A stretch of DNA of 63,991 bases, the filler included, from Olpidium bornovanus S191 (lineage: Eukaryota; Fungi; Olpidiomycota): NCBI GenBank assembly GCA_017911155.1. It is 32 parts of 32 records of this genome, joined end to end, with 100 filler letters (N's around TTAATTAATTAA, not from the genome) between each part and the next. Parts side by side here need not be neighbours in the genome. Positions count along the whole stretch, not along the records: positions 11,875 to 13,677 come from JAEFCI010005521.1; 31 more parts are not named here. One strand, written 5' to 3'. The notes under the pieces are model-generated. The model did no database searches. It was not told the origin of the DNA and was given only the letters and a program-made list of their open reading frames with translations. Within the stretch, counting starts at the first letter, position 1, and the number at the start of each line of letters is the position of its first letter. This document shows positions 12,023 to 13,677 of this stretch, in pieces. A program made the position numbers and the translations under genes.

Positions 12023-13677
12023 ATGTCCGGAAGGGCCAGGCCCCGCGACAACGCGTGCAGCTTGCACCTGAGCAACGTCACCCCGGACACGCGGTGAGCG
12101 GGAGGCGGCGCGGAGAGCAGAGAGGAGAGGAGAGGAGAGGAGGGGAGAGGAGGGGAGGAGCGGAAAACGCGCGCGCGCGGGGACCGGGGGTGAGAGGGGA
12201 AGGGGGAAAGGGGTTGTTGGGGTGGAGGTGGTGGGAACGGAAGGGGCCCGTGGGGGCGGAAGGCGTTGCGCAACGAGAGAGAGAAGAGGGGGCCTGAGCG
12301 CCCGGACGCGGAGAAGCACGCAACACGCTCGCTGGGGTTCGGTTTCCGGGTGCAGGGCCCGGAAACGGCTGCGGAAGCGCCGCAGCGGACTCTTTCCGTC
12401 GTTTCTCGGCCTTTCTTGCTTTCCGGGAACCCGCGAACACGCAGTTTTGGGTTTGGCCGGCTTGCGTGCGCTGCCGCTCGCGTCGGGACAGTGCTCCCCG
12501 TTAATCCTGCCCCGTCCTGGCTTCCGCCCTGGCTTCCCTCTTGGCGCCGTGCTGCGGTGTTTCTGCTCCCGCCTGAGAAGTCCCGACGACCTTTACGACA
12601 TTTTCGAGAAGTACGGAAAGGTCAAAGACGGTATGATCCCTCTTGTGCCCGCGCGCATTTGCCACAGTGGCCTCGTCACGAGAGATCTGACCCGATGGAC
12701 GTCGTCCCGCGCGGGGTGTTTGTGTTGGGAGGACAGTTTACATTCCCCGCGACTACTACACGGGCCACCCGCGCGGCTTCGCTTACGTCCAGTATCTTTT
12801 TTTGCACGTCGCCGAGCGGCTTTCACTTTTTGCGTCTTTTCTCTGGCTACAATCTTTCTGTGCCGTTACGAAACCGCCGTGGATCACTTGACTGGGTGCT
12901 CGTTTTGCGTACGACAGGTTTTATGAGGAAGAAGCGGCTGATCTTGCGTACCGCAAGAACGAGTACGTGACCTTGCGCGGCCAGAAGATGTCGGTAGATT
13001 GGGCCAGGGGCGGTCGAAAGTGTACGTTGAGAATCATCGTTCTCCAGCCTTGGCTTGCTTTCGATGAGGCGAATTTTCGAATCCCAAGACAGCGGGCGGA
13101 AGTTTTCAAGTTTTGCGTGGGTGAACCTAGAGCACGACGCTGTTCTCGAGGGTGGTGTGAATTTCGAGTTCCCGCAGGCGGCCAAAAAGCTGAGAGGCAC
13201 GAGAGAGAAGAGTGAGAGTGAGAGTGAGAGAGAGAGCGAGACCCTCAAGGCGTGCGAGCCCGAGGGAGGACCCACAAGCTAGTCCAAGCTGTGCGGGAAT
13301 TTCTTGGGCGCTTCAAGGCGTGCGAGAACGCTACCCGGTCCACCGAGAATGACGTGAAGCTTACACTGCAACGACTTTACCTCGTTTTACCGCTCCCGTA
13401 CAACCAATAGCTGCTGTCGAGATGAGGGGCAGGTGATGCCTTGTGGCTGGAGTTACAGCACCTCTTTGCAACGCTGCCGTCCAACGGCAAGCCTTTTGCT
13501 AATTATTTCGTTTACGGGCGCCGCCCTTGCAGGATGGGCAATAGGTCTCCCAGGAGGCGTAGGTGAGCACGGACACCACACTTCGGTGTCGTGTCGCGTC
13601 TGCTTCAGCCGTTCTTATTTTGCCGGTAGAGTAAACTTCTTGTGACGCGCCTGTCTCGCAGGAGGTCCTGGTCCCGC
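12023..13677 (+). CDS. SRSF10: SR splicing factor, SRSF10/SCL-like RRM protein, 3'-truncated, 7 exons
   Basis: Exons 12023-12093, 12581-12630, 12737-12791, 12918-13021, 13411-13432, 13533-13562 and 13662-13677 splice in frame to MSGRARPRDNACSLHLSNVTPDTRPDDLYDIFEKYGKVKDVYIPRDYYTGHPRGFAYVQFYEEEAADLAYRKNEYVTLRGQKMSVDWARGGRKSAVEMRGRMGNRSPRRRRRSWSR. Confidence 0.85.
12792..12917 (+). other. Putative U12-type (minor) GT-AG intron in the SRSF10-like gene
   Basis: 5' site GTATCTTTT (8/9 match to GTATCCTTT), branch-like TCACTTGAC at about 12884-12892, phase 2 within the Q codon of GFAYVQF. Confidence 0.6.

What the first reader, a model, noticed from the sequence alone, without database searches (positions are those of the whole stretch)
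12792..12917. U12-like intron at the same position as the vertebrate SRSF10 minor intron
Seen: intron 3 of the SRSF10-like gene starts GTATCTTTT. Most donors in the window are GTRMGY-type (GTGAGT, GTAAGT, GTACGT, GTGCGC), though a few others also lack +5 G. It has a branch-like TCACTTGAC about 26 nt from the AG and interrupts the Q codon of GFAYVQ|F in phase 2. Knowledge (recalled): vertebrate SRSF10 has a U12-type intron at this RNP1 position that is used in its autoregulation, and Dikarya lack the minor spliceosome while some early-diverging fungi keep it. Inference: an ancient minor intron retained here, or one caught converting to U2 (+6 C to T, distant branch point). It predicts a minor spliceosome in this genome.
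Basis: partly seen in the sequence, partly recalled or inferred. Interest (0 to 1): 0.8.

Follow-up and report, generated by a model that had tools for sequence, protein, structure and literature searches.

The report
Minor-type intron in fungal SR gene
A 126-base intron in a splicing-factor gene of the root-parasitic fungus Olpidium has the start signal of the rare "minor" intron class and sits at exactly the codon position where sponges, Hydra, sea urchins and tunicates have a clear minor intron, so it is most likely an ancient minor intron that this fungus kept.

Summary
A GT-AG intron occupies 12792-12917. It starts GTATCTTTT, has TCACTTGAC with its A 26 nt from the 3' end, and splits the Q codon of GFAYVQ|F in phase 2. 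RNA contigs from two studies carry exactly this junction.

The piece matches the fragmented Olpidium bornovanus metagenome assembly. A second, diverged copy of the gene in that assembly (L001) starts the same intron with the perfect minor consensus GTATCCTTT and has TTGCTTGAC 24 nt from the AG. The rest of that intron is unalignable with the window's.

NCBI-named SRSF10/12-like genes of Hydra, a sponge, a sea urchin and a tunicate have textbook AT-AC minor introns at the identical site and phase. Hydra's also has T at +6.

Best reading (about 0.7): a retained U12-type intron of the GT-AG subtype, orthologous to the animal SRSF10 minor intron.

Main rival (about 0.2): it is now removed by the major spliceosome. 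The branch site is far from the 3' end and also fits the local U2 pattern.

Minor snRNAs and minor-specific proteins in the Olpidium genome could not be searched here. This is a new member of a known kind, of moderate interest.

The parts
12023..12093 (+). Exon 1 of the SR-protein gene (ATG at 12023; MSGRARPRDNACSLHLSNVTPDT + 2 nt)
   Evidence: Sequence and translation. RNA contigs join 12093 to 12581.
12094..12580 (+). Intron 1. It is U2-like (GTGAGC...GAGAAG), carries a GA microsatellite, and has a tandem AG/AAG acceptor of which the RNA uses the downstream AG.
   Evidence: The joint skips 487 nt in X1 and X2. Donor has 6 mismatches to GTATCCTTT.
12581..12630 (+). Exon 2 (R)PDDLYDIFEKYGKVKD
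12631..12736 (+). Intron 2, U2-like (GTATGA...GGACAG)
   Evidence: The joint skips 106 nt. The L001 copy has GTGAGT here, so the donor is free to vary.
12737..12791 (+). Exon 3, VYIPRDYYTGHPRGFAYV + CA (RNP1 of the RRM)
   Evidence: Pfam RRM_1, E = 7e-17.
12792..12917 (+). Intron 3, the finding: a 126-nt GT-AG intron in phase 2
   Evidence: The joint 12791|12918 is present in RNA contigs of two runs.
12792..12803 (+). 5' splice-site motif GTATCTTTTTTT, 8 of 9 matches to the U12 consensus GTATCCTTT (T for C at +6)
   Evidence: 11 of the first 12 nt are identical to copy L001 (GTATCCTTTTTT), while the intron interior is unalignable.
12884..12892 (+). Branch-site-like TCACTTGAC. The putative branch A at 12891 is 26 nt from the 3' end. 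It matches TCCTTRAC at 6 of 8 positions.
   Evidence: The core CTTGACTG is shared with L001 (TTGCTTGACTG, 24 nt from the AG).
12914..12917 (+). 3' splice site ACAG
12918..13021 (+). Exon 4, (Q)FYEEEAADLAYRKNEYVTLRGQKMSVDWARGGRK
   Evidence: The peptide is identical in L001.
13022..13410 (+). Intron 4 (GTACGT...ATAG), often retained. Retention gives a stop at 13213-13215. It contains a GA-rich tract at about 13190-13245.
   Evidence: Retained contigs have depth 88.4 (X1) and 22.9 (X2). The spliced joint has depth 65.7 in X1 only. The ORF 12967-13215 is listed. The intron is alignable with L001 over its length.
13411..13432 (+). Exon 5
   Evidence: Joints, translation
13533..13562 (+). Exon 6 (start of the RS domain)
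13662..13677 (+). Exon 7 (RS domain), cut by the edge of the piece
   Evidence: The loose end AGGTCCTGGTCCCGC... after 13563 matches 13663 onward.

Best explanation
Intron 3 (12792-12917) is a U12-type intron of the GT-AG subtype, removed by the minor spliceosome, in a single-RRM SR protein gene of the SRSF10/SC35-like group. The gene most likely belongs to Olpidium bornovanus.

Proposed mechanism (inferred, not shown):
- U11 and then U6atac pair with GUAUCUUUU. The U at +6 would form a G.U wobble in place of G-C.
- U12 pairs with the CUUGAC-containing branch site.
- The intron is spliced efficiently and constitutively.

The intron is orthologous to the AT-AC minor intron at the same codon position in animal SRSF10/12 genes. 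It would therefore predate the split of animals and fungi and have switched subtype (AT-AC to GT-AG, or the reverse) on one of the lines.

What is shown: the splice junction, the motifs, their conservation between two diverged copies, and the positional identity with animal minor introns. What is inferred: that the minor spliceosome removes it.
For: 1. RNA contigs from two runs use exactly 12791|12918, and no contig retains this intron.
2. The donor GTATCTTTT matches /RTATCCTTT at 8 of 9 positions. The consensus is as given in PMC2846911. The intron lacks both -1 G and +5 G, at least one of which every other donor of the gene has in both copies.
3. A second copy of the gene in the same assembly (L001, GCA_017911155.1) starts the same intron with GTATCCTTT (9 of 9). 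It has TTGCTTGAC, 7 of 8 to TCCTTRAC, 24 nt from the AG.
4. The two copies differ at 27 of 67 third codon positions. Their intron 3 interiors are no more alike than shuffled sequence (0.65 against 0.60). Yet 11 of the first 12 nt and CTTGACTG are kept.
5. The chance of an exact donor together with a branch match of at most 1 mismatch is about 3e-7 per intron.
6. The identical site and phase hold AT-AC introns with canonical branch sites 12-17 nt from the AC in four animals:
   - Hydra: ATATCTTTT / TTTCTTAAC
   - the sponge Dysidea: ATATCCTT / CCCCTTGAC
   - sea urchin: ATATCCTT / TTCCTTGAC
   - the tunicate Clavelina: ATATCCTTT / CTCCTTAAT
7. Metagenome locus L071 has a GT-AG version at the same site, GTATCC with CTTAAC.
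8. Hydra shows that +6 T occurs in a bona fide AT-AC minor intron.
9. Minor introns and minor snRNAs are reported in chytrids, Neocallimastigomycetes, Zoopagomycota and Mucoromycota/Glomeromycetes (PMC10639083). PMC7865070 places Olpidium as the closest zoosporic relative of the non-flagellated fungi. Lineages on both sides of it therefore keep minor splicing.
Against: 1. No minor snRNA or minor-specific protein of Olpidium was seen, because the genome could not be searched with these tools.
2. The branch-like motif lies 26 nt (window) or 24 nt (L001) from the 3' splice site. In the animal orthologues seen here the distance is 12-17 nt. The larger distance equals that of the U2-type branch sites in the same gene (CTRAY motifs 20-50 nt upstream).
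3. The window's branch motif has 2 mismatches to TCCTTRAC, which chance gives 13% of the time. CTTGAC also fits the loose U2 pattern yUnAy.
4. The +6 C-to-T change makes the donor GTATCT, one step from the common fungal GTATGT.
5. No formal PWM or intronIC score was computed.
6. The RNA evidence is assembled contigs, not reads.
7. The assembly is a binned metagenome from non-axenic zoospores (PMC7865070), so the organism is not certain.
Confidence: 0.7

Rival explanations
1. A former U12-type intron that the major (U2-type) spliceosome now removes. It would be converted or in the course of converting, with the U12-like 5' motif a relic. Olpidium may have lost minor splicing or be losing it.
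For: - The branch motif lies 24-26 nt from the AG, like the U2-type introns of this gene and unlike the 12-17 nt in the animal orthologues.
- CTTGAC fits yUnAy.
- +6 T moves the donor towards GTATGT, and intron 2 of the same gene uses GTATGA.
- Conversion from minor to major is a documented route of loss (PMC10639083, PMC2846911).
- An unknown freshwater eukaryote (L004/L009) has a 34-nt U2-like intron, GTACCTCC..., at the same site.
Against: - The L001 copy keeps all 9 consensus positions, and both copies keep 11 of 12 nt, despite 40% third-position divergence and a scrambled intron interior. A relic without function should have decayed.
- The donor lacks both -1 G and +5 G and matches the U1-complementary consensus CAG|GTAAGT at only 5 of 9 positions. 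That would make it a very poor U1 site, yet the intron is fully spliced in the RNA contigs.
- +6 T also occurs in Hydra's AT-AC intron, which cannot be U2-type by its motifs.
Confidence: 0.2
2. An ordinary U2-type intron that resembles a U12 donor by chance, gained independently at a favoured insertion site. It would have no shared history with the animal minor intron.
For: - The window copy alone has one donor mismatch and a statistically weak branch match (7e-4 and 13%).
- A large genome could hold some such introns by chance.
Against: - The site and phase are identical to U12-type introns in four animal phyla and several metagenomic eukaryotes.
- The sister copy has a perfect donor and a branch site with one mismatch, about 3e-7 per intron by chance.
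- In species without minor snRNAs, published screens found 0-1 U12-like GT-AG introns among about 13,000 (PMC2846911, Table 2).
Confidence: 0.03
3. The intron is U12-type, but the contig comes from another eukaryote in the non-axenic zoospore preparation, not from Olpidium. It would then say nothing about fungi. This rival concerns the organism and can be true together with the best explanation.
For: - The assembly is a composition-binned metagenome of 13,695 short contigs from washed cucumber roots (PMC7865070).
- Two copies with 40% third-position divergence sit in one bin, which could mean two organisms.
- No phylogeny of the protein was made.
Against: - The contig passed binning that required fungal affinity (PMC7865070).
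- The sequence recurs, with only two base differences, in RNA runs of several studies under one organism label, as expected of a common root parasite.
- The PRDYYTG form of the protein differs from the PLDYYTR form of the animal hits.
Confidence: 0.1

Closest known systems
The autoregulated AT-AC minor intron of vertebrate SRSF10 (Meinke et al. 2020, PMC7244321) and its orthologues in animal SRSF10/12-like genes
   Same: - The gene family is the same: a single RRM with RNP1 RGFAYVQF, followed by an RS domain.
- The intron site and phase are the same, after the second base of the codon that follows GFAY[VI]. This was shown here for Hydra, a sponge, a sea urchin and a tunicate.
- The 5' motif TATC[CT]TTT is the same.
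- The CTTGAC branch core also occurs in the sponge and the sea urchin.
   Different: - The termini are GT-AG here and AT-AC in the animals.
- The branch motif is 24-26 nt from the 3' end here, against 12-17 nt.
- The intron is short (126 nt, against 0.4-3.7 kb).
- It shows no competing major 5' site or internal poison exon.
- In Olpidium the unproductive isoform comes from retention of the next intron (13022-13410), not from the minor intron.
U12-type introns of early-diverging fungi (Rhizopus, Phycomyces, Rhizophagus, Basidiobolus, Spizellomyces; PMC2846911, PMC10639083)
   Same: - Both are rare GT-AG or AT-AC introns with the /RTATCCTTT consensus in non-Dikarya fungi.
- Some of those introns are conserved in position with animal minor introns.
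   Different: - No paper in the searched library mentions Olpidium together with the minor spliceosome.
- The orthologous gene of those fungi could not be fetched here, so it is unknown whether they share this intron.
Minor-to-major intron conversion (Burge et al. 1998; PMC10639083)
   Same: - The window copy has a derived +6 C-to-T change.
- The branch site lies at a U2-like distance.
- An unidentified eukaryote (L004) has a U2-like intron at the same site.
   Different: - The donor is still far from a U1-complementary site, with no -1 G and no +5 G.
- The motif is conserved between the two copies, which points to continued use by U11/U6atac.

Membership tests
U12-type (minor) intron | 5' splice site /RTATCCTTT | tested here: met
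   The window has GTATCTTTT, 8 of 9, with T at +6. The sister copy L001 has GTATCCTTT, 9 of 9. The same +6 T is present in Hydra's AT-AC intron.
U12-type (minor) intron | Branch site TCCTTRAC close to the 3' splice site (usually about 10-20 nt; published screens scan -40 to -5) | tested here: inconclusive
   The window has CACTTGAC, 6 of 8, with its A 26 nt from the 3' end (13% by chance). L001 has TGCTTGAC, 7 of 8, at 24 nt (1.2% by chance). Both fall inside the scanning range of PMC2846911 but are farther out than in the animal orthologues.
U12-type (minor) intron | No polypyrimidine tract between the branch site and the 3' splice site | tested here: inconclusive
   About half of the bases between the branch motif and the AG are pyrimidines in both copies (read). 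The U2-type introns of this gene also lack clear tracts, so the feature does not discriminate here.
U12-type (minor) intron | Positional homology with established U12-type introns | tested here: met
   AT-AC introns with consensus donor and branch site lie at the identical site and phase in Hydra, Dysidea, Strongylocentrotus and Clavelina. L071 has a GT-AG version.
U12-type (minor) intron | Removal depends on U11, U12, U4atac and U6atac, and these snRNAs and the U11/U12-specific proteins are present in the genome | not testable with these tools
   The Olpidium assembly cannot be scanned for DNA or by profile. A literature search for Olpidium with 'minor spliceosome' found 0 papers.
SRSF10 / SC35-like (SCL) group of SR proteins | A single N-terminal RRM with RNP1 RGFAYVQF, followed by an RS-rich tail | tested here: met
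   Pfam RRM_1 at residues 16-81, E = 7e-17. PRGFAYVQF and the tail ...RSPRRRRRSWSR are in the translation. L001 gives about 110 further RS/RD-rich residues.
SRSF10 / SC35-like (SCL) group of SR proteins | Orthology to SRSF10 rather than SRSF2 or another SR protein | tested here: inconclusive
   - Identity to proteins that NCBI names SRSF10 or SRSF10-like is about 41-47% (Exaiptasia 47%). The Hydra hit at 50-51%, named SRSF2 isoform X1, has the SRSF10-type ...RKTPHQM... motif.
- Against PDB the best single-RRM SR match is SRSF2. No SRSF10 structure is there.
- After the RRM stands GGRKSAVEMR, where the animal proteins have G[DG]RKTPxQMR.
- No tree or reciprocal search was made.

The most novel reading that the evidence does not exclude
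The minor intron in the RNP1 motif of SRSF10-type genes dates back at least to the common ancestor of animals and fungi, and Olpidium still has a working minor spliceosome. The expression of this SR protein would then have been tied to minor-spliceosome activity for over a billion years. That would make the SRSF10 link between the minor and major spliceosomes, described in mammals, an ancient regulatory circuit rather than a vertebrate invention. In Olpidium the tie would work through the rate of intron 3 removal together with the neighbouring retained poison intron 4.
Probability: 0.15. Interest if true: 0.75.

Novelty: new member of a known kind. Interest (0 to 1): 0.45.

Why it matters
Minor introns are rare, and why they persist is debated. 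Some argue for neutral retention, others for a regulatory role.

A minor intron kept at the same codon of the same splicing-factor gene from sponges and chordates to an early-diverging fungus would be a useful marker in three ways:

- It would predict that Olpidium, the zoosporic lineage nearest to the terrestrial fungi, still has the minor spliceosome. That helps to time its loss before the Dikarya.
- It would give a concrete case for asking whether the coupling of SRSF10 levels to minor-spliceosome activity, seen in mammals, is ancient.
- It has a practical side. Gene callers misread this site: the Olpidium model BJ554DRAFT_2546 and many metagenomic models run through the intron as ...VQYP...

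Tried and rejected
- **Raw-read RNA runs.** X21 and X18, chosen for read-level junction counts, laid no read at all. They share only the species label, probably the host's. The RNA evidence therefore rests on Logan contigs.
- **Homology search with exon 4 plus the retained intron.** It found only the mis-annotated Olpidium protein P0001.
- **Word-index searches.** They returned few hits, mostly animal, and no named fungal or plant orthologue.
- **Profile search of 1.84 billion representatives.** This was wasted. Whole-protein scores put multi-RRM proteins (PABP-like and similar) in all 150 listed places.
- **Aligning exon peptides as fragments to bias a profile.** They misaligned.
- **First metagenome scan.** The second scan worked, but most loci were spliced metatranscripts or SRSF2-like genes.
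- **Styela protein P0030.** No gene with this product is on record.
- **Literature.** No paper links Olpidium with the minor spliceosome. Searches for a U12 intron in plant SCL genes gave nothing usable. The codon position of the vertebrate SRSF10 minor intron is not stated in the texts read.
- **Rfam scan of L001 and the Hydra locus.** No family matched, as expected.
- **Chance resemblance.** Considered and rejected; see the third rival explanation.
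Full report
**What is in the sequence**

The piece 11875-13677 holds the 5' part of a gene on the + strand. Translation across GT-AG introns gives MSGRARPRDNACSLHLSNVTPDTRPDDLYDIFEKYGKVKDVYIPRDYYTGHPRGFAYVQ|FYEEEAADLAYRKNEYVTLRGQKMSVDWARGGRK, followed by an RS-rich tail. Pfam finds one RRM_1 domain (E = 7e-17).

The exons are:

| Exon | Coordinates |
|---|---|
| 1 | 12023-12093 |
| 2 | 12581-12630 |
| 3 | 12737-12791 |
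| 4 | 12918-13021 |
| 5 | 13411-13432 |
| 6 | 13533-13562 |
| 7 | 13662 to the edge of the piece |

Logan RNA contigs of two runs from two studies carry every one of these junctions, including 12791|12918, which skips 126 nt with GT..AG ends at depths 114.8 and 22.9. Two raw-read runs chosen for read-level counts laid no reads. They share only a species label, probably that of a host plant.

**The observation**

Intron 3 is 12792-12917. It starts GTATCTTTTTTT and ends GTACGACAG. It splits CA|G, the Q codon of GFAYVQ|F, so it is in phase 2. TCACTTGAC lies at 12884-12892, and its A is 26 nt from the last intron base.

The other donors of the gene are GTGAGC, GTATGA, GTACGT, GTGATG and GTGAGC. 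Each has G at -1 or at +5. Intron 3 has neither.

From the base composition of this gene's introns I estimated chance:
- a donor within one mismatch of GTATCCTTT: 7e-4 per intron
- an exact donor: 2.7e-5
- a branch match as good as the window's (2 mismatches to TCCTTRAC within -40..-5): 13%

The window alone is therefore suggestive but not conclusive.

**Organism and a second copy**

The only near-identical database protein is P0001. It is a mis-predicted 'hypothetical protein BJ554DRAFT_2546' of the Olpidium bornovanus MAG GCA_017911155.1, on an 1817-nt contig (locus L001). That assembly is a binned metagenome of 13,695 short contigs from non-axenic zoospores washed off cucumber roots (PMC7865070). 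This fits a window stitched from short pieces.

L001 is not the window's contig. It is a diverged second copy of the same gene:
- The RRM differs at 2 of 67 aligned residues.
- 27 of 67 third codon positions differ.
- Introns 2, 3, 5 and 6 are no more alike than shuffled sequence.

In L001 the same intron begins GTATCCTTTTTT, the perfect U12 consensus. It carries TTGCTTGAC, 7 of 8 to TCCTTRAC, 24 nt from its AG. So 11 of the first 12 intron bases and the block CTTGACTG have been kept while the rest of the intron was scrambled. The single donor difference is the C/T at +6. For L001, an exact donor together with a branch site of at most one mismatch has a chance of about 3e-7 per intron.

**The same site in other organisms**

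I fetched the genes of proteins that NCBI names SRSF10-like, SRSF12-like or (Hydra) SRSF2 and read the DNA after RGFAY[VI]. All have an AT-AC intron after the second base of the next codon, the same site and phase as here.

| Organism | Locus | Donor | Branch motif | Distance to AC |
|---|---|---|---|---|
| Hydra vulgaris | L002/L003 | ATATCTTTTC | TTTCTTAAC | 12 nt |
| Dysidea avara (sponge) | L008 | ATATCCTTG | CCCCTTGAC | 12 nt |
| Strongylocentrotus purpuratus | L089 | ATATCCTTA | TTCCTTGAC | 17 nt |
| Clavelina lepadiformis (tunicate) | L092 | ATATCCTTTA | CTCCTTAATC | 13 nt |

In the tunicate the next exon reads [22 protein letters not shown].

Metagenome contigs add further cases:
- ATATCCTTT in L033, L039 and L091
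- ATATCTTTT in L090
- one GT-AG version in L071 (GTATCCATC with GACTTAAC 16 nt from the AG)

Nine truncated database proteins run on as ...[VI]QYP..., the read-through of RTATCC.

An unidentified freshwater eukaryote (L004/L009) has a 34-nt U2-like intron at the same site. An AT-rich organism (L007) has none.

That mouse and human SRSF10 have an autoregulated AT-AC minor intron from exon 2 to exon 4 is stated in PMC7244321.

**Interpretation**

The intron's ancestry as a minor intron is well supported. The site is shared with minor introns of four animal phyla. The motif is conserved between two diverged copies. Published screens found 0-1 U12-like GT-AG introns among about 13,000 in species that lack minor snRNAs (PMC2846911).

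Whether the minor spliceosome still removes it is an inference. Three points favour that:
- A donor with neither -1 G nor +5 G matches the U1-complementary consensus at only 5 of 9 positions, yet the intron is fully spliced in the RNA contigs.
- The L001 donor is perfect.
- Hydra shows that +6 T is compatible with an AT-AC minor intron. From the established pairing schemes, a U at +6 would replace a G-C pair by G.U with U11 and U6atac (knowledge, not tested).

Three points count against:
- The branch motif lies 24-26 nt from the 3' end in both copies. That equals the distance of the CTRAY motifs in the U2-type introns of this gene (20-50 nt) and exceeds the 12-17 nt of the animal orthologues.
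- CTTGAC also fits the loose U2 pattern.
- GTATCT is one step from GTATGT.

Phylogeny makes retention plausible. Minor introns and snRNAs are reported in chytrids, Neocallimastigomycetes, Zoopagomycota and Mucoromycota/Glomeromycetes, and are absent from Dikarya (PMC10639083). Olpidium branches between the chytrids and the non-flagellated fungi (PMC7865070).

My odds:
- retained U12-type intron: about 0.7
- now U2-type, converted or converting: about 0.2
- chance: about 0.03
- separately, about 0.1 that the contig is not from Olpidium at all

**What could not be done**

The Olpidium assembly cannot be scanned for snRNAs or by profile with these tools, and I had no permitted query for a minor-specific protein.

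No fungal or plant orthologue could be fetched. The word-index searches returned mostly animal proteins. The one exhaustive profile search was swamped by multi-RRM proteins.

No PWM or intronIC score was computed.

**Comparison with the known**

The closest known system is the SRSF10 minor intron of vertebrates.

It is the same in gene family, site, phase and 5' motif.

It differs in four ways:
- The termini are GT-AG rather than AT-AC.
- The branch site is distant.
- The intron is small.
- It has no competing major 5' site or internal poison exon.

In Olpidium the unproductive isoform arises from the next intron, 13022-13410. It is retained in contigs of depth 88.4 (X1) and 22.9 (X2), against a spliced junction of depth 65.7 in X1 only. 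Retention gives a stop at 13213-13215. Unlike the other introns, this one is alignable between the two copies and contains a GA-rich tract.

The finding is a new member of a known kind: a U12-type intron in an early-diverging fungus, conserved in position with animals.

**Verdict**

Interest is moderate (0.45). It would rise if minor snRNAs are found in Olpidium and the same intron turns up in other fungal and plant SCL/SRSF10 orthologues.

Noticed in passing
window 13022-13410 (L001 764-1191): Intron 4 is retained in the dominant RNA contigs (depth 88.4 and 22.9, against a spliced joint of 65.7 in one run only). Retention puts a stop at 13213-13215. Unlike the other introns it is alignable between the two diverged copies. 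It holds a GA-rich tract (about 13190-13245) and a well-conserved block near its 3' end (about 13330-13395). It looks like an autoregulatory poison intron of the kind common in SR genes. GA-rich elements are what mammalian SRSF10 binds in its own pre-mRNA (PMC7244321).
   Followed up: partly
L001 1-1817 (GCA_017911155.1, JAEFCI010010079.1): A second copy of the same gene sits in the same MAG. Its RRM differs at 2 of 67 aligned residues, but 27 of 67 third codon positions differ and most introns are unalignable. These could be paralogues, very divergent haplotypes, or two related organisms in one bin. Its annotated protein BJ554DRAFT_2546 (P0001) is a false model that reads through introns.
   Followed up: partly
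P0058-P0068; loci L033, L039, L090, L091: Nine database gene models of SRSF10-like genes stop or run on as ...GFAY[VI]QYP.... This is the read-through of an (A/G)TATCC donor. Gene callers systematically fail at this AT-AC minor intron, and the QYP tail could serve as a quick flag for it.
   Followed up: partly
L004/L009 347-380: An unidentified freshwater eukaryote has a 34-nt intron, GTACCTCC...CTTGACTTGATAG, at the same site and phase. It has no U12-like donor, so it may be an example of minor-to-major conversion. The codon there becomes CAC (H).
   Followed up: no
window 12572-12583: Intron 1 ends in a tandem acceptor, CCTGAG|AAG|TCC. The RNA contigs use the downstream AG (12580|12581). Use of the upstream AG would add one serine (TRSPDDL instead of TRPDDL), a NAGNAG-type alternative.
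   Followed up: no
window 12963 and 13076: Both RNA runs read A for G at 12963 and C for T at 13076. The strain in those samples differs slightly from the assembled one. This is not evidence of editing.
   Followed up: no
window 11875-11925 and 12104-12166: The contig starts with a G-run followed by about 35 T. Intron 1 holds a GGAGAG-type microsatellite. L001 starts with long C-runs. These low-complexity ends probably explain why the assembly broke here.
   Followed up: no
L002 6113-7239, L003 4905-6049: Hydra vulgaris has two assemblies with the same AT-AC intron, whose donor is ATATCTTTT (T at +6, as in the window). NCBI names one product of this gene 'SRSF2 isoform X1', although it has the SRSF10-type ...RKTPHQM... 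motif.
   Followed up: partly
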